From Perkinsus chesapeaki ATCC PRA-425 (lineage: Eukaryota > Protista > Perkinsozoa), in contig JAAPAO010000271.1 of NCBI GenBank assembly GCA_013115145.1, positions 1-44,309 on the forward strand: a DNA stretch of 44,309 bases, in the 5' to 3' direction. Positions 10,262-23,449 of the stretch are shown here, in pieces; the stretch's first letter is position 1; every line of letters starts with the position of its first letter. Position numbers and translations under genes: made by a program. Below the pieces are notes generated by a model. The model saw only the letters and a list, made by a program, of their open reading frames with translations, made no database searches and was not told the origin of the DNA.

Positions 10262-10512
10262 TCCGATCATAACCACCTTGTATGACGAATGTTTTGCATG
10301 ACGATGTTACTGTTGTTATCGTGGCTGTTGTTAATTGTGAGTTAGACTTGAGTGCTTATATAGGCGGGCTTGGTTTGCACACAGCCAACTACAGTACTCA
10401 ACACTTCACCACAATAATCCACGGCTGGTTTAATTTTGCAGCAATCGAGCAACATGCACTGGTAACAATAATAGTAACACTTCATCTTCCTGCGGTAGGT
10501 GTGGGGTTGGGG

Positions 10513-13500
10513 CTAATCCTGGGCTCCTCCGTCAGCAGTAGGACTGCAAGTGGAGACGGCAACCTTGGTACCTCTGGCAATAAGACAGCTTACTCCTCCT
10601 TAGTCGCTGAGTTGGATCCAGTCGCACCACTTTCTTGGTTCCCCTTCTCCATATCAGGATGAGGCCGAGGGGGCGGTAGTGGCGGGGCCTGAGTGTAGCA
10701 ACTGTAACACTGCCATTAGCTCCTCTCTCTACCGCTCCCTTCTCATGCTGACCGGTTGATAATGCCCCAAGGGGTTTTCGAGTGGGAAGTGGAAGATGGT
10801 CGGAATCATCGTCCGAGGTGTTGTCGTCATCGTCGTTGGATGCTTCGTTATTCTGCTCCATGATATCGCTCGATGATGAGTCGCTGAAATCGTCATTGGT
10901 GATGAGGCTCAGTTAGTGACGACACACCTATCATCCGAGGAGATGGCCGAAACTTTCGACGCTAATTCGTTCTTCTTTTGTTTCGCCTCTGAAATACCAA
11001 AGTATTGGGCACATTCTGGCTATCTGCCTACGTCTGGCATGCTGCGCCTTGTCCCGCAGAGACATCTTCACAGGGCCACCACCCGATTGATGAGGTGACG
11101 ATGCTCCAACAGTGACATCAGCAGCAGCAGCACCGTCTTCATCTTCATTATCAACGTTGCTTTCCACAACCTTCGGTGATGGCATGCTGTTGTTATCCTC
11201 TATAGCCATCATTGGTGATCCAGGTACAACACTGAGGCAGTACTCTGGAAGCACGTATCCCTTCACCAATTACTACTTCGGCAAGGACTCTCCTCCCTCC
11301 CTGTTGTTCACTATTTTTGACAAAACCACAACTCTAGCAGCCTCTCTATGTACTTCGACAGTTCCTTAATAATAGTGCATTTAAGCCGTTATTATACTAC
11401 TGCTCCTATTACTGGGACTATCGAGCACAGTGGGGCCGGGCAAAGCTTTGAGACCCTTCTTAGGGGTCTTCTTAGGTTCATCCTGATCACTTATCAAAAA
11501 TATCAACCCGCATCATGGTTGCTACGGTAGTGATATCAATGACCGATAAGTCATGAAGAGTTTTGCGTTTGAAGTCGCTCATCGGTAGAGGTGCTGTGCT
11601 CACTGCACTCCCTGCCTCAGACTCGGCTTCGTATTTAGCATCGGCCAACGCTTTCTTCAGCTGACGACCCTCAATAATCCTAAAACCACAGCCGAGCTAA
11701 ACTTTAAAGGATAAGCAGCAGCTATCTTACGCTCCTATAATAGTGAAGACTACCGTGCCGACCACAAGGCCTATCAGCGGGCCAAAGCTTACGACAGTAA
11801 CCGAGGACGCTGTCAATCCAGCGATGGCTGACGGAGAATACTTCTATGCTTTGTTGAAAATCGTTGAGGTGGATACTGCTGCTGCTTACCAGACCAGAGT
11901 AGAGCCGGGTTCTTGATGAGGGCCAGGATGGACATGATAAACGATATCCCTAGCGTTATTGAGAGGGCCTGTGGAGGCAACGATGATACCAACTGAAGAG
12001 GTTAGCACTTACTGTGTGGCAAATCCAAGTAGTGATAAAACCACCAATATTGGATATAATAGTGCTACCAAATACAAAACCCATATTGACGCCTGAACAT
12101 CGAAAGTAGTGATGAAAATCTGAGAGTAGGAGTAGTAGTACCGAGAAGGCTGCAAAGAATATGTCTGTTGATTATGCCTGATACCAACACTAAGAGACTC
12201 TCCTTTGGTGAACCTGTTTATAAGGCTCATGATGAAACAAAGGAGAATGGTAAAGGACGCGTACTGTCGTATATCCTAAAGGCAATGAGGTTGAGAGATA
12301 TCATCACCACAGAGCTGATGAATGCAACAATGAAGCCGGGTCCCTTGGCGAGGAAGATCTATGGAGGAAGTGTGAGGGGTTAAACATTACACCACTCACT
12401 TACCAATAAAGCTATACAGATACCAATACTGAACACCAACTGATACCCAAGGAAGGCCGGCGTTGATTGATGCCGGAGCTGTGGATGATGATATGTGTTG
12501 AAGGGATGGTGGCATCCAACAACAACTCACCAATAGGATGGCGCGATTGAGAGTGAGGCCGAGGAATGTGCAAATTCCAAGCCCTATTAGGAGACTTTCC
12601 CCTTCGGTGGTGAATCCTCCTTCTTTAGAAGCTAACCCGATGCCACAAGCTATCTGTGAGGCAAGCATACAGTATCTGCTCATGACAGTGTTAATGAAGG
12701 TATAAGGATGACGCTGTTGCTGCTTCTGCTGCTAACCCGAAGTGTGGCTTAAGATCCGCCTCTGGTTTATAGGAGGCTTCACGCCTTTTAACGGTTTCGG
12801 CAGCCATAGTAGCGGCCAACGCCGACGAACATGCCTCCTTCTGACCACAGGTGACGATGATCGAGAGGATGAAAGCCGCCTTCGATCTCACCTCATCTTT
12901 GACTCGTTGCTGCTTAGCTGCGTAGGCCAGCACCCCAGCTACCAATGCTAGTAGGAGTATCTACCAACGTGCAGTGGCACAGCAGGGCAGCTGCTGCTGC
13001 TACTACTACCGGTATTAAGGCATCAAACAAGGCTTTGCCCAGTCCAAGGAGCATAGCGATAAGGAACATTGGATTGGCCAAGGTGCTGAGGTTGTCCTTA
13101 GTTATGATGAATGGGAGCAGTACAACCAAGAATAATAAAAGTATAGCAAACAAGCGTTTAACATATATTATCTGAAGGGGAGGGATTATTATGATTATGA
13201 CTAGATGGCATGGTGTCATACGCCCCTTCTCATGAACCATTTAGTGAAGAGTGTAAAGTTATAATATATCTTATCTTTGGTGCTGGCATTAGGATCTAAA
13301 CCCTCTTGTGGAGGTGGGGGAGGCTGCCTTCCCATTAGGCAGGGTAATGCAGTGCCCTTGTAATATAATGGTGGGTTATTGAGGTATCTAATCACCAACA
13401 ACAACAGCAATTGTTCATTCTCTCCACCTAAGTGCCATACTCAGCAGCCTTGCCAATGAGGATACCCAAAGGTAGCAGCTGCCAGCACAAGCTGACCATA

Positions 13501-16500
13501 CGGCCAGTCTCCCTTATCAGCTCATCATACGGCGTGTGTATCTCACCACAGCTTTGACCTGATTATATCACTAATAAGTGCCGGCGGCGGCGGCAATGTT
13601 GATGGATGAGTTCGTACATGGTTGAGGATCCCTCAATTTCTTAGAGTATAAATGAGCTCGTTCTTTGATTAGATATGCCTTCACGTTCCAATTGTCATAC
13701 CATAGCCCAAACGATGTAGGCAGCATTGATAGAGCTACATCCCAACGGATAACCTATCAATAGGAGGTGAAGGGAAGAGCAATGGAAAGCTGAGTCTGCC
13801 CTACAGACTCAGGCCCGTCCGGATCCAGCTCCTGAATATCAAGTTTGATCCAGTCGGCTAGAGGCGCGACCTAACACAGATTCAAGGAGGGCGGCGGGGG
13901 GCCAGGCGTGGATGCTTACGACATAATCTTGACCCATGAAGTGACCATTAGCACAGAGGAAGAAGATTATTAAGGAGCCGCCAGCTATAACTATAATCAT
14001 ACCACGACCAAGGAACCTATGTTGAAGATTTATAAGAAGTGTGGTATGAAATCGTACACAGTGAGAGAGTCATCCCACGGACACATCCAGTTCTTGGCAC
14101 TAAATGGATCTGTGATGATGAGGGAACGGTAGAATAGCAGCATCATACACTGTGCGGCGGCGAACACAGCGGCACGGCACCCGCTCAATATGCCTAGGGT
14201 AATAACACAGATATAGTGATAATGAGGCAGGGGGCTGAGCACCCAGCATGAGTAGCTTCTGGCATCTTGGACGAGTTGGCTTTACTGAGTACTTCGCCGC
14301 AACATACAAACCAAAGAAGTCATAGTTGATCCATCGAATGAGAACAATACTGACCTAATACAGTAAGGTGCTACGAGAGGGTTGTAGTGAGTACCTTACA
14401 ATCGAGAGGCATACGGCCGCGAAGAGTACTGCAGGCCCCTCACAACGGGGCACACCCACCGCCATAGTCAGGAACTACAAAGATGAACAACATTGGCAGG
14501 TAGGATGGTGAGTAGGCGAGTAGGGATACTTGAGAGAAGACCTCGGTGGCTGCTTGGACCCAACGCCAGGCCACTTCAGCCAGCTCTCTGATGCCAGAGA
14601 ATACATCTGGTATTTCAACAACAAGGGCTTCAATACGGATGGAGACGTCGAAGTTGAGAGAGCCTAGGGATGCTCGGACCTGACCAGGCGGAGGTGGCGG
14701 CGGTGGGGCTAGGAGGGTTCTGCAGGACCAATAGGAAGTCGAAGAAGAACTTAATGAAGGTGGAGACCGCCCGGAGGATGGTATCAATGGCAGAGGCAAC
14801 GACCTCTCCCAAACCGGGAAGATCTGCATCAGTTTTGATAGGAATGCCAATGACCAATAATCTGTGCCGCATCTCTGTAGGTTTATCCGGATCAAACGGT
14901 GATACCGATGCTCTGAGAATCGACAGGTCTAGCACAAGACCATCATAAGAGCACACTTACCGTATAATGAGGGCAAGCAGCATCAGAAGGGCCATGATTA
15001 GCTCACCAAACATTAGGGCTAGGAGGAGCCTGGAAAGGTGGATAAGTGAAAGGGCTAGTAGTATAGAATGCCGTGATCATCACCATATGGCTATCCCACC
15101 ACCAAAGAAGCCTATGAGAATAAGGCCTATGACGCGAAGAGTTCGACGGAGCGTAGTCCCTGCTGGATTTATGAGCAGACGGAACAACCTCATAGGGACC
15201 TGAGGAGGGAGCAGATGGTGATGATAGATTATTATAATGAGGGTGTTCTTACGGAAGTATTCTTCTTAACAAATCCTCGAGCGCGTGAAACATAACTGAT
15301 CAGTCTCGGATGCTTTATAGGATCGGGGCCGGTGGTACGATCGAGAGCATACCTTAAAGCGGTCCAAATAGTGTATAAGCGGAGGAGGATGTGGGGAGCC
15401 TTTACATGACTGCAAGTATTAGCAGACATATCCACGGGGTGATGTTGCTGACCCATATGGCCACCAACTCGAGAGAGATGCCCTCTCCGGTCACTTCATC
15501 ATCAAACACTGACTGAGCCTTCAGAAAAGAGCAACAACATCGCGAGTATCTGAGGTTGACGCTAGTAAGATACGCCAAAGGTTGATATATACTCTTCTTC
15601 CAACGGGCAGCATTCTCCTGTAAAGCCTGCCGTGGCGCAAGCATCATGCTTCGAGCAGGCTGCGTCACCCAGGAGGTTGACAGCACCAGAAAGCGGTATA
15701 GCACACTCGTCACTGCTCCTTCTGTTTCGTTTCATCGTACCAGAAATGCAGTCGTTGATAAGACCAGCAAAGACGGCAGTGATCGGCATGACTGCTCCAC
15801 GAGATGTCACACCTGAGAGAGTGATAAAGTAGGTAGCCCAGACTTAGGCACGTACCAGAGGCAGGAGATCCTCTTCCTTCAACATTTGACGTTACGTTTG
15901 GTATCGATGAGCCTGCTGTATGGTCCCATACTGCTGGCTGCCATGCTTCACCGTCCCATCGCTCCAGTCGTATCTAGCAACATAATACGGCCCTATAATT
16001 ACGAACTGCTGCTGCTGCTACTTACTTCATCAGCTTTATCGCAGCAATGGGCAGTGTCCCTCCCTGCGTGCCTCATTGAGATGCATCTGACATCCACTTG
16101 ACTTGACCTAAGCAAAGCAATCGTCGGTGATCTCTCGGCAACTTCAAGGGGCATGACAGCAGTAACAGAAGGACAACATATGTCCCTACCTTCCCTTTCT
16201 GATAGCTGGTGTACCAGAGAAATCCATACCAACCCACTCCTCTCCTGGTCGACACATGGCAGCAACACCCGCCTTAGACACCTAAGAAACCAATGACATA
16301 ATATGGAAGGAATAGTCCAAGCAAGGGGCGCCGCCTCACCGCGCAGAATGCTGCCCATTCAGTGCCGGTGTCGTCGCTGAAAGCTGATTCTGGTCCGTAC
16401 CTATTGAGCTGTCGAGAAGCCGGTAATAGGAGGCGTGAGGGTACATGTAAGGGTCATCCAGGGCATAGGCGGGAGGGAGAACAGTCGAGGATATGGGCTC

Positions 16501-19411
16501 ACCGAAACCTGTTACCTCATTAGTGCCTGAAATGGCATCGCTGGGATTCGAACCCACGACCCTCTCTCTGTGGGGGCTTACAATCATCATCAGAATAAAA
16601 GTGTAGTCGGCCTACTCCCCATGCTCGCTGTCGGACCCGCACAATACTGGGACATTGGCCGTACTGACCCTCGCCAAGATACGAGACACGCCACATAGAA
16701 TTAAAAAGGGACGGTCTTTTTTGCCATCCTCCACCACCGAGGCCTTTAAGACTGAATGAAGGCAATGCTCGGTACATTAGTAGCGGAACGCCAATGCTGC
16801 GTACGCCATGGTGGTCTCCCAGGCCTCGCCCGTCCACATTTGAAGGTCGACTGAGCGTGCCATCTGTGTAGCCACACCAGACTGCTTCAACCGAACACAC
16901 CTAGTAGAAATGATTAATATTGGCCTCATTACTCTTTATTCCTTACTTCACTGTGCTCGGCCTCGAGGCGCCAAAGTCAAAGCCCGTCCACGCCTCCACG
17001 CCAACACACGGGGCACAGTCGGCATGCCACAGAGTAGTGGTATCATTATCCGAAGCTCTACTTGGGGAGTTCACCCCAGTTGATGCCATCGGCTGAAATA
17101 AGGCATCAATCATAATCCAGGCGGCGTAGTTGTCCTCTGCTATCCTCACCTCACCACCCTCAAGGAAGTTATCTGGATGACATGCTGTATCAGAATACAT
17201 TTCAAGCTCGGCAATTCTCCAACCATCCCTGACATAATCACTGAGGACTATCCGCCATTGAGTTCCCAGTGCAGCGGGGTACCGTGACCATGTCCCACCG
17301 CCGACCTGATAATCATCATCATCACAATGATATTTACGATTATCGTCATTGTTGTCTGCCTACCTCAGTTAGTCTGCCCGTAATGGTCCAGACCGCAAAG
17401 TCGTTGACAATATGAGAGGTAGGGCCCTCAGTAGTGTTCCTATTCCACCATTCAAGTGTAATACTAGTAGCTTGACGATTAACCTCCTTGGCCTGGAATA
17501 TCCTAATACATCGAACCTGTCATCACCACCAACATCAACATCATCATCACTCAACCATATACTGGGCTCCTCACCTCATGAGGGGCATCGATGCCTACAT
17601 CCAGTCCTACCCAAGCGCGGAGCTGCTGCTGGAGGCTTCCGCTACCATCCACACTTTCGGTCATAACTGGTTTTCCTTGTCCAATCCATCCGGTCTTGAT
17701 ATCCCCATCAAATGCTCGGGCGGGGCCGGCAACCTGACAGCAATATTTTACCAAGATATGTCGCCCTCTCCTCCTCGTCCACCTCGGCACCATCGATGCC
17801 CGATGAGCTTGCTAATGGTGTTATACCACCTCTCACTGTAATAGCCTCGGTACCTGATAGCAACACCTTCCCTATGTATCGATGATGCTGCTGCTGCTAG
17901 CAGATGGTTTACAATCGCTATCGGTGTGCATGATAAACTCCTCTATCTCCCATTCATTGGGGGCCTCACCAGCGGCATGCTCTCTAAGTTGACCTACTTA
18001 CACCATATACCCCAACCTCGTCTGGGAAGGCAATACCGGATATCCTCCACAATGTGGCTGCCAAGGCAGGTCTTCTGTCCCATGCTCCACCACCTATCTC
18101 ACTGCAAGAAGCACCAGCATCATGGCCATGGTAAGTGTTCCCTACTTCAATGTTATCCAGCTTTCCCATTCCGATCCAGACCACCGCTGGATCCATGCCA
18201 CAGTGGCCTGCTCCTCCACCAGACGGCTTTGATATATCTTTACACACTTCACATCAAACTCCCCCAACCTCTGCACACCAATCCAAGCCGCACCAGCGTC
18301 AGCATACGAATGTACGGCCTTCCAGCCCGAGAACACGTCCCCATCAAATGCCAGGCGGCTTCTTTGGTGCTGTGATGCGTCCCCACTTGTAATGTATCTA
18401 GGAGGGTCTTGCCAGTCCTCCTCCACCGGGTCAACACTGGCTGCAGAGCACATAGTGTCAGAGTACAGGCTGAGCTCTTGGACCTGCATTCGCACTACAA
18501 ACAAGGGTGCGATGGGGCACGTTGTTATCACATTCCATGTCGTCTTTGGTCTGGCCCATTGCTCCTCGCTATGGATCATCCTCCACATTGAAGCAGCCAA
18601 TGCTGGACGCTGGTTCCAGGTACCTGAATAGACACAATATAACTAGCCATCATATCCTTAACCATTGAATACTCCCTCCGATGGCATCTTGAAAATCTGC
18701 AACTTCCCATCCTAGCCCGATCCACTTCACAATTTCCACAGAGGATGCCTGTCTTGAAGGGTCTGGTGACTGTATAAGCTTGAAGCAGGCGACCTAGAAC
18801 AATAGGATGTGCCCTTGCTCCAACACACATACAATGAGATATGACCTCTTTTGGTGCAGTAAAGAGCAGGGCTAGTGTGGCCTGACCCGAATGGCATCCT
18901 CTATTTGGATTAGCTTCATCGCTGCAATCGGCCACCCAAGCCGTGAACTCATCCTGGTCGAATGCCAATGCAGCCTCCCCTCTGATGATGACCAAACCAT
19001 CCACGCTCTTGTCCATAACAATACTTACATGCTTGCTGTTGCAGTTGGCTCGCCGTCAAGTGCATCGCCGCCGGAGCAATCTTGTTCAGAGTAGAATCTC
19101 AATTCTGACACTTCCCATTTATCCTCAACACTTGCAAAATTTCGTATACCCCACAAGTATCTGACACCTCTAGCCATGAACTAGCCATCGTTGAGCCCGC
19201 CTCACCCCGTTTGTGGTTTATTATGTTCCCACTGACCACCTTGAAAGGTCGGATTTGATATAGTAAGGGTGGTTTCCCACGTATAGCCACTCCATCGCTG
19301 TAGCAACCTAAGGTGATTACCATCGCAGGTAGTCTTCTTCTTGAAAGCAGACAATTATTTCTACGAGTGCAAAAGGATTCGAAGGAGGGTAGTAGAATGG
19401 AACCTTGCCGA

Positions 19412-19443
<32 letters not shown>

Positions 19444-20816
19444 AATACATGCTTTGTGCTGCTGTTGAGGGTGAACTTGTTGCTCTATATCCATCAGATT
19501 GCCATACCATAACGCATCTTATATCATTTACCGGACTATCTAACACACCACCAAAGCTGATACAGTAATAACAACACACCACGACGGCTCTCACTAAATT
19601 CCTGACCGATCCATGCCGACTCGGCCGGGCAGCCTGTTGGCTGGGTCGATGAGCATGATGCCATCCACGCTGTGTCCGTGTTATAATCCACAGTATCTAA
19701 TCAAACACTGCACCTGGAGCCATTGGGCAGCAGCAATCAGCCTACTAGCTGCCAGTAGAGGGTCTCCTGAAGTCCACGTCATCTCTGCTGGCGATGCGAT
19801 GACGGTGTTAATGTCAGTTAGTTCGAACCTCTCGTCACAGATAAAGTCAGAATAGAAGTGCACCTCAGCAACGGTCCATCGGTCTTCGAGCTGAAAACAA
19901 GCAGGCAATACAACTGCATCACCATGTCATGAGATGCTTCCGACATCGTCAGCGTTGGTGAGCCTCCAGAGTGTCCTAGGTGGCGCAGGCCTCTGCTGCC
20001 ATACCCCTCCCGAGAGCGCATCCAATCTGAACTCGGGCATGTACGCATGTCCTGTCCACTTTTCGACTTCAATCATTTGCCTAAACACATCATCCATCTT
20101 GTACGACTATCTATTACTGCTGCTACGTTCGCCTGGACCATATAGGCGACTGGTATATCTTCATACACTTTATACTTGGTATCGGTACTATTTGAGGATT
20201 CGGCGACTGACTCGCTGTAAGAATATACCTGAAACCAATCGATATACTAGACACTAAACCAAGGAGGGAGCTGACGTATTCCAAGCCGGATCGTTGGCAA
20301 TTGATGCGCCTATCCATTGGGTTCCTGAAACACTAGTAGATGAGCGCATCGACACCAACGGTGTACCTATGGCGCAGCCTCCTGTAGCCAGACGGCAGTC
20401 CGCTGACCATGCTGTGGTAAGGATAGAATCGAATGCTCTCACTGCGGTGTTAACTGAAGTACTCCTATTATTATATTTATTATTATCATTCACCTGTATA
20501 TTCAGTCGAATGGGAGCTCTCTGTTATGTCAGATAGTTGAACTAACTTATCATCCGCACAGTCCCTATCCAGGTACATCTTAACTTCATGGATTTCCCAG
20601 AAGTCATGCACCGGACCACCGTTAATCAGCCCTACCAAGACAGTATCAATAAAAAGCAAGTCCATCTACATCCGCACTATAAAGCTGATTCGCTGCAGTC
20701 TGTTGGCCCGTAACATTATACAGTATGATGATCCCGGCCAGGACCACTCTACGCAAGGAGGCCCCCTCCCCCCGCCCTTGCCGCTGCTGCTGCAAGTGGA
20801 GTGCTTGTAGGTGCAT
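10513..20816 (-). CDS. Giant membrane protein: signal peptide + 7 discoidin/F5-8C-like modules + Cys-rich module + >=15 hydrophobic segments + acidic/Pro-rich tail (dozens of exons)
   Basis: ATG at 20816, then RRVVLAGIIILYNVTG. Seven repeats of W-x-I/V-x-E-L/V-x-F/M-Y-x-D-x-x-C ... AFD...T-x-W ... AWIG ... V-x-C-V/I-x-I-x-Q ... W-x-G-x-x-W. Then DAACSKHDACATAGFTGECCP..RCCC. Hydrophobic exons could be chained with GT-AG introns from ~15500 to ~11650; last exon ...PTADGGAQD* at 10513. The single-gene model is inferred. Confidence 0.65.
16533..16563 (-). other. tRNA 3'-half-like fragment inside a 55-nt intron (16527-16581)
   Basis: AGGGTC GTGGG TTCGAAT CCCAG CGATGCC A: variable loop, T-arm (4/5 pairs), 7 nt plus discriminator. 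Splicing GTAAGC..TTTCAG restores YSDDDC-TNEVTGFGEPISS. Confidence 0.45.
19412..19443. repeat. (GTT)n microsatellite in an intron
   Basis: ttgttgttgtcgttgttgttgttgttgttgtt read directly. Confidence 0.85.
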
Positions 20817-20961
20817 GTTAAGAGCGAAGCATGCCTGTGTTCACTAGTGTCTGGTATTAACCACTCAACACGCCTCCAAAGTATGAATGAAATAAAAAGG
20901 ATAACAGGAAAGGTTAATACTCTTTACAAATTCTTCTTGTTATTTATAGTAGGAAATGACG

Positions 20962-23449
20962 TTACATAGGAGCTGACACCCTAGTAGCTGGAGTGGTAGT
21001 CTCGGAGGTGGTAGTGTCCTTGGTCCTTGTACGTTGCTTCTGAATCACTAACGTCTTATAATCGCTACTGTGATGATGCTCCTCCATAGCGTCCAGTAGC
21101 CCAATGTCACCTGTTGGCTTAGGCCTGAAATGCTTGGTGATAACAATATAGTACGGTTGTCTGTCGCTACTACCTGGCAGTGTATTTAGCAAGGCCAATG
21201 AAAAGGCCCTTCAATGGCGAGTTGGCCAGTAGCACTCCTGCGCCAGCAGGCATAACCAGTATCCAGAACGGTAGGAAACACAGCACTACACCAGCGGCAA
21301 GCAAACCATAGAAGACCTTCTTGGATAACTCATGCCTGCATAAATTCTACATGCCTTAACGAATTAAAGCTACTATTACTTCCAGAGGATGATGTTCCGA
21401 GCCAGAGCCACACCTTCAACGATGTTCTTGACTGTAGGCTGGAAACCCGCTGCCATCTCCTTAACCCAACCAGGTGACATTCTCGTGAAGGTCTTAATAA
21501 GGCCACCAAACTCTTGTTGATCCACATCATCTGCGAAGGAGGAGTATGCCTAGACTGCAAGATACGTATTATAAGCAGATACTCAAACCAGACAAGTGAA
21601 CCATGAGAGAGTCCTAATAGGATTATCTAGCTTGTGGGCGAACTGCCCACTATTGCAGTAGCGGACTACGTACTATACCACTGGAAACGATATTTCCCTT
21701 AGGTATTATTATTATTACTATCATTATCATTTTCCTCCACCTCCAACAGCACTAACTTCCCTGTCTTATCGAAACCGCTGGTCATCGACTTATTAGCCAT
21801 AAACCTCTCATAGCTGATGACAATGATGATGACAACATCATCCACTACCATACCGACACTTACCCTTTAAGGGTCTTATTGCGTACCATAAAGGCAGCGG
21901 TTATCCAACAGGCAAATGCAGGCCAGTAGGCGGCATAGTAACTAAACGCGGCCAAGTACTTACACTGAGCCAGACCTCAACGACCTTACCTGGCTATCAC
22001 ATAGCCAATAAGGGCACCGAAGGACTTGAACCAATTCTGCCACATAAGGATAGGGAGTAGCTGATTCATTACAATAGGCTCGAGCCATCCAAACCATAGA
22101 ACGTCGGCCAGCCACCTAAAAGACTATAATATTACATTATAATATAATCACTACATTCCTGGCCCGTAAAGAGCATTAATATCAAACTTGGGTTTGGGTT
22201 TCGGTCTTGGTACCATCTCCTCTTGAACGAATGCTATCTTTTCTGACCATGGTGTGAACATTATTTCCATGGCCAGATGCACAGCACCTGCTGGTTCACC
22301 TAAAATAAGGGAACTGAGACGGAGCGACGTGGTTAATACTACCCTCGTGCGTAAGGGGTACCCACCCATCGGTCCTATGACCCGGGGCAAGATGTGTTAG
22401 GTCTATAACAGCTTCACCGATGAGATCATCATCAGATGTGGCATCCCAGTCCCATCTGATAAAGATACATTCAAGGTCGGCTTGCACACCTCTCCTCTAT
22501 TACACTTGGACCTTCATCTTTTGGCATGGCACGTTTACTACTATAGTCGTGCACTCGTGGTTCCATACTGGGGACAGAGTCTTCTTACATGTTGGGGTGC
22601 GGCGAGAGGTCTATTCGGTCAATTCACAGCGGAAATGTGGTATATATTACTTTATCGCTCAAAAGAGTAACCACACAGTAAGGATCAGATCCTGTAGCCT
22701 TGCCTATTATGTTAGTATCAGCTGCCTTCAGACCAGATGCCTCTATAAGAGTAACATTTAATAATGCATACAGTTCCCAGCCGAACTTCACTAATAATAG
22801 AGACATTCAAACACTCCATGACATTATCCTTATTACATGTAGCATCGCTCATATCCAACATGCCTCCACCACTACCGGCATCAAAGGTCCCACCAAATTT
22901 GGCGAATTGCCCGACCTTGCCTAGTCCAGCTCCAGCCATGTGGGCAGCCCCTCCGACAGCGTGGGTGCCGGCACCAACTGCACCGGTTGCTACGGAACCA
23001 ACTGCTCCAGCGGTGCCCTTAACAGCGGTTTTACCAGCATGCCCGACAGCTGAAAAGGTGCCAAGGTTCCGCACTGTGAAGAATTTAAAGATACCTTTAG
23101 CTGCCCCGGTTATTTTCGAGAAAGGCGCACCAATTCCCTTTTTATTTTTATCCGAGCCTGAATCTGTCTTCTCCATCTTGGGGCTAGGTGTCCTTGTGGG
23201 GGAGGATGAATCACCAGTACAACTAACGGCAACGTGGGGGAATCTTTAGGTCGGATTGACCTTACCTTCTGCATTTCTTAGTCCCAATGAACCTTCCACT
23301 GGCTAGACAATCGCTGCATACTGTCTTCCCACAAGGTTTGCAAACATATGACCTATAAGTGTCCGGCACTCCACGCTAGCCCCTCCCGTCTATTACTTAG
23401 CCGTCTCCGCTCCACAGAGCTCACATTTGGTAGATATAGCAACGGTCAT
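20962..23449 (-). CDS. MCTP-like protein: N-terminal 8-Cys zinc finger + Gly/Ala-rich region + C2 domain + PRT_C-like membrane region
   Basis: Spliced start MTVAISTKCELCGAETAKSYVCKPCGKTVCSDCLASGRFIGTKKCRSC. C2 motifs LNVTLIEASGLKAAD..GSDPYCVVTL and WDWDATSDDDLIGEAVIDL..W. C-terminal FQPTVKNIVEGVALARNIILWKHELSKKVFYGLLAAGVVLCFLPFWILV resembles PRT_C. Confidence 0.75.

What the first reader, a model, noticed from the sequence alone, without database searches (positions are those of the whole stretch)
10513..20816. Giant lectin-repeat polytopic membrane protein: candidate novel receptor/channel system
Hand splicing gives one continuous ~10.3 kb gene: signal peptide, seven discoidin/galactose-binding-like modules, a Cys knot-like module, at least 15 hydrophobic segments with loops (e.g. 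IRWINYDFFGLYVAA, CQSCGEIHTP), and an acidic Ser/Pro-rich cytosolic tail. F5/8C-type domains bind glycans, lipids or collagen (established). I know of no described protein joining a 7-repeat array to such a large membrane domain. Inference: a ligand-sensing channel, transporter or adhesion receptor at the cell surface, possibly for host recognition. The ORF track shows it only as dozens of fragments.
Basis: partly seen in the sequence, partly recalled or inferred. Interest (0 to 1): 0.78.

Follow-up and report, generated by a model that had tools for sequence, protein, structure and literature searches.

The report
Lectin-repeat multi-pass membrane protein gene
A Perkinsus (clam parasite) gene of about 50 tiny exons most likely encodes one very large surface protein, with seven sugar-binding-type repeats outside the cell joined to roughly nineteen membrane-crossing helices. 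The gene is real and conserved in a sister species, but its membrane part matches no known family and no transcript data could be checked.

Summary
The finding lies on the MINUS strand (ATG 20816, running down to at least 11490). It is a real, intron-dense gene.

- **Gene model:** an anchored splice model gives about 55 exons. 46 of 54 introns are 36-62 nt long. Shuffled controls give no comparable model.
- **Repeats:** leave-one-out HMMs confirm six complete and two partial copies of a ~150-170 aa module.
- **Repeat fold:** protein-language-model features place it with F5/8 type C (discoidin) at 0.95. No Pfam model reaches threshold and the structure predictions were too poor to use, so I call it discoidin-like, not a proven member.
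- **Conservation:** two partial Perkinsus olseni proteins are orthologous to exons 8-13. They agree with four of my splice junctions and show strong purifying selection.
- **Membrane part:** a Cys-rich module and about 18-20 hydrophobic helices follow through ordinary 43-55 nt introns. One gene is therefore more likely than two (about 0.8).
- **Tail:** the acidic tail is doubtful. An in-frame TGA sits at 11489-11487 and is avoided only by an atypical 145 or 259 nt intron.
- **Membrane family:** unassigned.

Function (adhesion or sensing receptor) is inference.

The parts
20678..20816 (-). Exon 1: start codon at 20816, basic n-region, and a 10-residue hydrophobic core (20747-20718). Putative signal peptide or signal anchor.
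   Evidence: First ATG after an in-frame stop. The upstream gene's last stop-free stretch ends at about 20965. Hydrophobic core coordinates. No signal-peptide predictor was available.
20549..20631 (-). R0: an N-terminal remnant holding only the last strand motif (W-x-I-x-E-V-x-x-Y-x-D-x-D-C) of the repeat.
   Evidence: Leave-one-out HMM, iE 4e-5.
15857..20463 (-). Seven tandem discoidin-like modules, each split over 2-5 exons. Approximate spans: R1 20463-19825, R2 19696-19067, R3 18981-18436, R4 18396-17914, R5 17733-17171, R6 17074-16571, R7 16408-15857. R7 lacks the last two motifs.
   Evidence: Leave-one-out HMMs and alignments A1, A2 and A8. Atlas features give F5_F8_type_C at 0.95 for 18148-18396. 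P. olseni orthologous fragments cover exons 8-13 with pN 0.19 against pS 0.85.
15574..15708 (-). Juxtamembrane Cys-rich module (C-x17-C-x5-C-x9-CC-P) in exon 27.
   Evidence: Read directly from the sequence. No Pfam or PDB sequence match.
11731..15479 (-). Polytopic membrane region: about 18-20 hydrophobic helices in exons 28-48 (model residues ~1288-2175). The longest loops are ~110, ~95 and ~60 aa. It ends in a tightly packed block of about 8 helices.
   Evidence: Kyte-Doolittle scans of the model. Exon structure. The + strand is A-rich here, so the coding strand is T-rich. No family match per exon.
11487..11730 (-). First cytosolic segment after the last helix (exon 49, 62 aa, ...MMRVDIFDK), followed at once by an in-frame TGA at 11489-11487. 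This is a possible true stop.
10401..11345 (-). Candidate acidic Ser/Pro/Asp-rich tail exons (stop-free stretches 10934-11269 and 10535-10912). Whether they attach to the gene is uncertain, and the terminal exon and stop (10515-10513 or 10400-10398) are ambiguous.
   Evidence: Stop-free stretches of 112 and 126 aa. The donor at 11490 scores as average (3.94). The acceptor at 11346 is poor (-1.08). The alternative acceptor at 11232 is good (3.87) but gives a 259-nt intron. Composition.

Best explanation
**What it is.** One minus-strand gene of a Perkinsus species, running from ATG 20816 to at least the TGA at 11489-11487, in about 49-55 exons. It encodes a membrane protein of ~2240-2450 residues.

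**Layout (read from the sequence).**
- A signal sequence puts a ~1250-residue N-terminal ectodomain outside the cell.
- The ectodomain is a string of seven divergent beta-sandwich modules of the discoidin (F5/8 type C, galactose-binding-like) kind.
- A small Cys-rich module follows.
- Next comes a large domain of about 18-20 membrane helices, with a strongly basic first cytosolic loop (12 K/R).
- The protein ends in a cytosolic C-terminus, possibly extended by a ~210-residue acidic disordered tail.

**How it probably works (inferred).**
- The repeat array binds a repetitive glycan or lipid ligand multivalently. Candidates are the host cell surface, the parasite's own wall, or prey.
- The polytopic domain anchors this array and converts binding into a membrane event. 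The most likely event is signalling or adhesion, in the manner of the alveolate CRMPs, adhesion GPCRs or polycystin-1. Less likely is gated transport.

**Shown versus inferred.** Shown: gene reality, the repeats, conservation in P. olseni, and the hydrophobic architecture. Inferred: the single transcript, the topology, ligand binding and all function.
For: **Gene model**
- Score is 261, against 3-24 for shuffles and 145 for the opposite strand.
- 46 of 54 introns are 36-62 nt.
- Only 10 of 54 introns are multiples of three, and all of those carry in-frame stops.

**Repeats and their kind**
- Repeats are validated by leave-one-out HMMs.
- Discoidin-like assignment: Atlas features 0.95 to PF00754 clusters, with 173 shared features. 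The best PDB profile hit is an F5/8 type C protein through the A-x-D-G-D-x-x-T-x-W motif. Weak Pfam hits go to two families: a carbohydrate-binding module (CBM_AftD, E 0.026) and DUF2961 (E 0.01).

**Orthology**
- P. olseni KAF4734102.1 and KAF4738544.1 align to exons 8-13 at 58-77% identity.
- They reproduce junctions 8/9, 9/10, 10/11 and 11/12.
- Exons are conserved while introns diverge in sequence and length.
- pN is 0.19 against a saturated pS of 0.85.

**Link between ectodomain and membrane region**
- Exons 25-30 are joined by introns of 52, 43, 55, 53 and 53 nt, four of them with a GTA-type donor start (GTAAGT, GTACGT, GTAAAG, GTAAGA).
- There is no gap that could hold a stop, an intergenic spacer and a new start.

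**Topology**
- The K/R-rich loop after helix 1 is consistent with an N-terminus outside the cell.
Against:
- No full-length orthologue could be retrieved. The word search sees only proteins of 0.55-1.75x the query length, and the one exhaustive search, on the 89-aa stretch holding membrane exon 42, gave only spurious repeat hits. Two other exon searches were blank.
- PF00754 is not detected, even in the multi-exon P. olseni fragments.
- The membrane domain matches nothing per exon, so nothing supports any particular activity.
- Exon boundaries in the membrane half rest on my own model only.
- Seven introns are atypically long (82-145 nt).
- The tail needs an atypical intron that skips an in-frame TGA.
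Confidence: 0.6

Rival explanations
1. The acidic tail is not part of this protein. The gene ends at the TGA at 11489-11487, leaving a 62-residue cytosolic end. The region 11345-10401 is then a separate small gene for a disordered acidic protein (a possible start is the ATG near 11212), or a 3' untranslated region.
For: - The TGA follows ...DIFDK in frame.
- Skipping it needs a 145-nt intron with a poor acceptor (-1.08) or a 259-nt intron, whereas 46 of 54 introns are 36-62 nt.
- Genes here can sit ~150 nt apart, as with the upstream gene's stop and this ATG.
Against: - The donor overlapping the stop scores as an average donor (3.94) and the acceptor at 11232 is good (3.87) and in frame.
- Two long stop-free stretches (112 and 126 aa) lie on the same strand.
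- A domain-free acidic protein on its own is less usual than a receptor tail.
Confidence: 0.45
2. Hand splicing merged two genes. One is a secreted or single-pass lectin-repeat protein ending near 15.2-15.9 kb, for example by retention of the intron after exon 29, which gives a stop within 8 codons. The other is a separate polytopic membrane protein starting at the ATG at about 15193 (MRLFRLL...). The two might be processed from one precursor by spliced-leader trans-splicing, which is reported for Perkinsus (from memory).
For: - 48 of 54 introns give a stop soon after if retained.
- An in-frame ATG lies three codons into exon 30.
- No transcript data exist here.
- The exhaustive search with a membrane exon found no annotated Perkinsus protein.
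Against: - The supposed spacer is a 53-nt sequence with a GTAAGA donor and a pyrimidine-rich CAG acceptor, like the other introns.
- The stop and the new ATG would be only ~30 nt apart.
- About three of 55 exons are expected to have a Met in their first three residues by chance (my estimate).
- Coding signal is continuous on both sides.
Confidence: 0.12
3. It is one gene, but the membrane domain is a glycan-handling machine (glycosyltransferase, flippase or exporter) rather than a receptor. The lectin-like array would hold the polymer of the parasite wall, as the carbohydrate-binding modules of the mycobacterial AftD and Emb enzymes do.
For: - A polytopic domain of ~19 helices with short loops looks more like an enzyme or transporter than a receptor.
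- One repeat gives a weak Pfam hit to CBM_AftD (E 0.026, below threshold).
Against: - No GT-C or transporter family matches any exon.
- With the N-terminus outside, the loop after helix 1 is cytosolic and basic. GT-C enzymes carry their catalytic acidic motif in the first outside loop (established knowledge, from memory).
- Nothing here tests this reading directly.
Confidence: 0.12

Closest known systems
F5/8 type C (discoidin, CBM32-type) domains, Pfam PF00754
   Same: - Module size of ~150-170 aa.
- An N-terminal A-F-D-G-D-x-x-T-x-W motif, a middle V-x-C-[VI]-x-I-x-Q ... W-x-G-x-x-W stretch, and a terminal W-x-[IV]-x-E-[LV]-x-[FM]-Y strand followed by Cys.
- Language-model features at 0.95.
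- The best PDB profile hit is an F5/8 type C protein.
   Different: - No Pfam hit reaches threshold, even for multi-exon fragments.
- There is an extra conserved G-G-x-W-x-x-R-P-A...L-W-R motif.
- Fold not verified.
Alveolate cysteine repeat modular proteins (CRMPs) of Toxoplasma, Plasmodium and Tetrahymena (PMC9670195)
   Same: - A signal peptide, then a large adhesive or lectin-containing ectodomain, then several C-terminal membrane helices and a cytosolic C-terminus.
- Alveolate lineage.
- Proposed host- or environment-sensing role.
   Different: - CRMPs have EGF-receptor-type Cys repeats, Kringle or MAR domains, and 5-9 helices.
- Here there are discoidin-like repeats, about 18-20 helices, and no such Pfam hits.
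- No sequence comparison could be run.
Plasmodium CCp/LCCL multidomain adhesion proteins (PMC2211786)
   Same: Alveolate (apicomplexan) extracellular proteins; the paper's full text mentions discoidin 8 times (title, abstract start and term counts seen).
   Different: As I recall, they are soluble or secreted, with no polytopic membrane region.
Polycystin-1 / REJ receptors and adhesion GPCRs
   Same: The design: a long modular lectin or adhesion ectodomain fused to a multi-pass membrane domain.
   Different: No GPS/GAIN, PLAT, REJ, PKD-channel or 7TM family hit on any exon. The helix count differs (11 or 7 against ~19).
Single-pass discoidin receptors (DDR1/2, neuropilins, Caspr)
   Same: A discoidin-type ligand-binding ectodomain at the cell surface.
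   Different: They have one membrane helix, one or two discoidin domains, and kinase or other cytosolic domains.

Membership tests
F5/8 type C (discoidin) domain, PF00754 | Match to the Pfam model at or above its gathering score. | tested here: not met
   There was no PF00754 hit at E<=1-10 for any exon-level piece or for the multi-exon P. olseni fragments P0003 and P0004. No whole repeat could be given by reference, so the test was weakened.
F5/8 type C (discoidin) domain, PF00754 | Characteristic sequence motifs in order: A-x-D-G-x-x-x-T-x-W near the start, and a hydrophobic W/I-x-E-x-x-x-Y last strand. | tested here: met
   Alignments A1, A2 and A8. A PDB profile search puts an F5/8 type C protein (8ayr_A) first, through this motif, but at E=0.2.
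F5/8 type C (discoidin) domain, PF00754 | Eight-stranded galactose-binding-like beta-sandwich fold. | tested here: inconclusive
F5/8 type C (discoidin) domain, PF00754 | Recognised as the family by an independent sequence-feature method. | tested here: met
   ESM Atlas features for 18148-18396: 27 of 30 hits are PF00754 or PF22633 clusters at 0.93-0.95, with recognition 2657 and 173 shared features. This is a lead-grade method.
CRMP (cysteine repeat modular protein) family | EGF-receptor-type / GCC2_GCC3 cysteine repeats in the ectodomain, and 5-9 C-terminal helices (PMC9670195). | tested here: not met
   No such Pfam hit on any exon. About 18-20 hydrophobic segments are present.
Polycystin-1 / PKD channel | GPS/REJ and PLAT domains, and the PKD_channel membrane domain. 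| tested here: not met
   No Pfam hit per exon. The loop after helix 1 is ~55 aa, too short for a PLAT domain. This is an exon-level test only.
OSCA/TMEM63 (RSN1_TM, PHM7_cyt, RSN1_7TM) | Pfam matches to the three family models, and 11 helices. | tested here: not met
   The lead came only from a remembered resemblance: three helices followed by R-L-L-V-I-G-I-P. There was no Pfam hit on exons 28-36, and too many helices are present.
Any described membrane-protein fold (channels, transporters, GT-C) | Structural similarity of the whole membrane domain. | not testable with these tools
   This needs the joined spliced sequence, which has no reference.

The most novel reading that the evidence does not exclude
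Perkinsus carries a lineage-specific class of surface proteins in which an array of discoidin-like lectin modules is fused to a ~19-helix membrane domain of a fold not yet described. Multivalent ligand binding outside would directly gate or drive a membrane activity (a ligand-operated channel or transporter, or an exocytosis trigger). Earlier unchecked notes of this scan on other discoidin plus multi-pass genes in the same genome would then be further members.
Probability: 0.25. Interest if true: 0.7.

Novelty: new variant of a known kind. Interest (0 to 1): 0.45.

Why it matters
**For Perkinsus biology.** Perkinsus species are major pathogens of oysters and clams. As I recall, how they recognise host cells from the parasite side is poorly known. 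A conserved giant surface protein with a multivalent lectin-type ectodomain wired to a large membrane domain is a concrete candidate for recognition, adhesion or triggering of secretion. CRMPs in Toxoplasma show that this design can control invasion.

**For gene finding.** In this genome, dozens of 36-62 nt introns hide very large genes from ORF-based views.

**Limits.** The architecture is predicted, not observed. The membrane domain's nature is open, and no function has been tested.

Tried and rejected
**Closed or exhausted tools**
- Exhaustive protein search with the 89-aa stretch holding membrane exon 42: only two spurious repeat or low-complexity hits. The query was short and Ala-rich, so the blank is not evidence that relatives are absent.
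- Word searches with the exon 13 stretch and with exon 33: blank. Full-length proteins were outside the allowed length range.
- Metagenome locus scans with exon 19 and exon 33: no relatives.

**Family and structure searches with no usable result**
- Pfam per exon over the whole gene: nothing at threshold. The weak hits (GP41, DUF6341, DUF2721, DUF6087) were rejected as chance.
- PDB sequence searches of membrane exons and the Cys module: chance-level only. The C/D repeat profile gave nothing relevant.
- Atlas on exon 33: no usable hit.
- Two AlphaFold runs, on exon 13 and on the P. olseni fragment with paralogue alignments: too weak. The fold searches were uninformative.
- Rfam on the region and on the P. 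olseni contigs: nothing.

**Ideas dropped**
- An OSCA/TMEM63 resemblance from memory had no Pfam support.
- No internal duplication was found in the membrane domain; the best off-diagonal score only equals the 95th percentile of the null distribution.
- A plus-strand gene was rejected: its model scores lower and only 5 of 42 introns have typical length.
- Naive maximum-length splicing over-read frames and was replaced by an anchored model.

**Left out on instruction**
- Searching or folding the joined spliced protein was left out. It has no reference.
Full report
**Where and what**

The window is eukaryotic, at about 45-55% G+C, with fragmented ORFs. Stop-free stretches show that the coding signal between 20.8 and 10.5 kb is on the minus strand.

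Earlier notes of this scan name the genome Perkinsus chesapeaki. I checked only that the nearest database proteins are from Perkinsus olseni, at 58-77% identity. Introns are tiny, as three-frame reading shows.

**Gene model**

A naive longest-ORF splicer over-reads. I therefore anchored a dynamic-programming model on peptides that I could justify by repeat homology or hydrophobicity, and trained splice matrices iteratively.

- The result is 55 exons and about 2449 residues, starting at ATG 20816.
- 46 of 54 introns are 36-62 nt, although any length from 24 to 200 nt was allowed.
- Only 10 of 54 introns are multiples of three, and all ten carry in-frame stops. This is partly by construction.
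- Controls run without anchors: the real strand scores 261, five dinucleotide shuffles score 3-24, and the opposite strand scores 145 with only 5 of 42 introns of typical size.

The continuity is therefore not an artefact of permissive splicing.

**Repeats**

Each module has four parts:
- A: A-F-D-G-D-x-x-T-x-W ... W-I-G-x-x-F
- B: V-x-C-[VI]-x-I-x-Q ... W-x-G-x-x-W
- C: G-G-x-W-x-x-R-P-A ... L-W-R
- D: W-x-[IV]-x-E-[LV]-x-[FM]-Y-x-D-x-x-C

HMMs built without one copy recover that copy as the top or near-top non-training hit among all 2009 six-frame stretches of the window. Most have iE between 1e-9 and 1e-2. This gives six complete copies, an N-terminal D-only remnant, and a last copy that lacks C and D.

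**What kind of module**

- Pfam finds nothing at threshold. There are only weak hits to CBM_AftD (E 0.026) and DUF2961 (E 0.01). It also finds nothing in the multi-exon P. olseni fragments.
- A profile of part A puts an F5/8 type C protein first in the PDB, but at E=0.2.
- ESM Atlas features of the 83-residue A+B piece of R4 match F5_F8_type_C clusters at 0.95 for 27 of 30 hits.

My reading is a divergent galactose-binding-like (discoidin-type) module, at about 0.8, with family membership not established.

**Conservation**

The profile search returned KAF4734102.1, a partial P. olseni protein. Its 90% cluster holds KAF4738544.1.

- These independently annotated fragments align to my exons 8-13 and reproduce junctions 8/9 (so the 141-nt intron is real), 9/10, 10/11 and 11/12.
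- On their contigs, aligned exon bases are 64-65% identical against 43-53% for intron bases, and the introns differ in length.
- Over 219 codons, pN is 0.19 while pS is saturated at 0.85.
- The end of contig L002 also shows that the 22-residue insertion in exon 13 is coding.

**Membrane half**

After R7 comes a Cys-rich module (15708-15574), followed by about 18-20 hydrophobic segments from 15479 to 11731. The first loop after helix 1 has 12 K/R, which fits an N-terminus outside the cell.

Exons 25-30, which bridge the ectodomain and the membrane region, are joined by introns of 52, 43, 55, 53 and 53 nt with ordinary splice sites. I therefore put a single gene at about 0.8.

The family of the membrane domain is unknown:
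- No Pfam, PDB-sequence or Atlas signal per exon.
- No internal duplication.

**C-terminus**

Exon 49 runs into an in-frame TGA at 11489-11487. The acidic Ser/Pro/Asp-rich stretches downstream can be reached only from a donor that overlaps this stop. That donor scores as average (3.94). It pairs either with a poor acceptor at 11346 (145-nt intron) or with a good one at 11232 (259-nt intron). I treat the tail as roughly even odds.

**What could not be done**

- The joined spliced protein has no reference.
- The length window of the word search hid any full-length Perkinsus protein.
- My single exhaustive search used a short, low-complexity exon and returned only spurious hits. Absence of relatives is therefore not shown.
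- Metagenome scans were blank.

**Comparison with known systems, and verdict**

The design recalls the alveolate CRMPs, which are adhesive or lectin ectodomains on 5-9 helices proposed to sense host contact (PMC9670195). It also recalls polycystin-1 and adhesion GPCRs. None of their defining domains is detected.

Unchecked notes of this scan list other discoidin-repeat genes in this genome, one of them with multi-pass helices.

I rate this a new variant of a known kind: a real, conserved, very large lectin-repeat polytopic protein gene with unproven transcript structure and unknown membrane-domain function.

Noticed in passing
window 20965-23245 (minus strand): The upstream neighbour is a separate multi-exon gene with a C2 domain (Pfam C2, E 5e-5 and 1e-3 on two exons) and hydrophobic segments. 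Its last stop-free stretch ends only ~150 nt above the ATG at 20816, so intergenic spacers here are very short.
   Followed up: partly
L002 about 150-215 (P. olseni contig JABANO010014444.1): The intron orthologous to my 36-nt intron 9/10 is far longer in P. olseni (a 52-nt insertion in the pairwise alignment). It contains CCCGAGGATCGAACCAGGGACC, which reads like the T-arm of a tRNA in antisense. This would fit earlier notes on tRNA-derived introns in this genome. Rfam gave no hit.
   Followed up: partly
window 19308-19448 (minus strand): The 141-nt intron inside repeat R2, confirmed by the P. olseni annotation, holds an AAT-rich run that would read as poly-Asn. It is one of only eight introns in the gene outside 36-62 nt.
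   Followed up: partly
whole gene, 54 introns: Only 10 of 54 introns have a length divisible by three, and all ten carry in-frame stops. 48 of 54 give a stop within intron+60 nt if retained. This fits selection against translatable retained introns, but my splice model partly forces the pattern.
   Followed up: partly
P0004 (KAF4738544.1) C-terminus; L002 end: The last 13 residues of the deposited P. olseni protein (TRRPGPGQAPSGT) look like annotation read-through into an intron. The contig itself continues with the conserved TWNQRPALAGSMW... exon in another frame.
   Followed up: partly
window 18490-18560 and 16630-16680 (minus strand): Repeats R3 and R6 share a ~16-22 residue insertion containing C-P between the L-W-R and W-x-V-x-E motifs. 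In R3 it is conserved in P. olseni.
   Followed up: partly
window 12000-23000: Strand composition flips at about 16 kb inside the gene. The + strand is A- and G-rich over the membrane exons, and has negative GC skew over the repeat exons. This reflects the amino-acid composition of the two halves, not a gene boundary.
   Followed up: no
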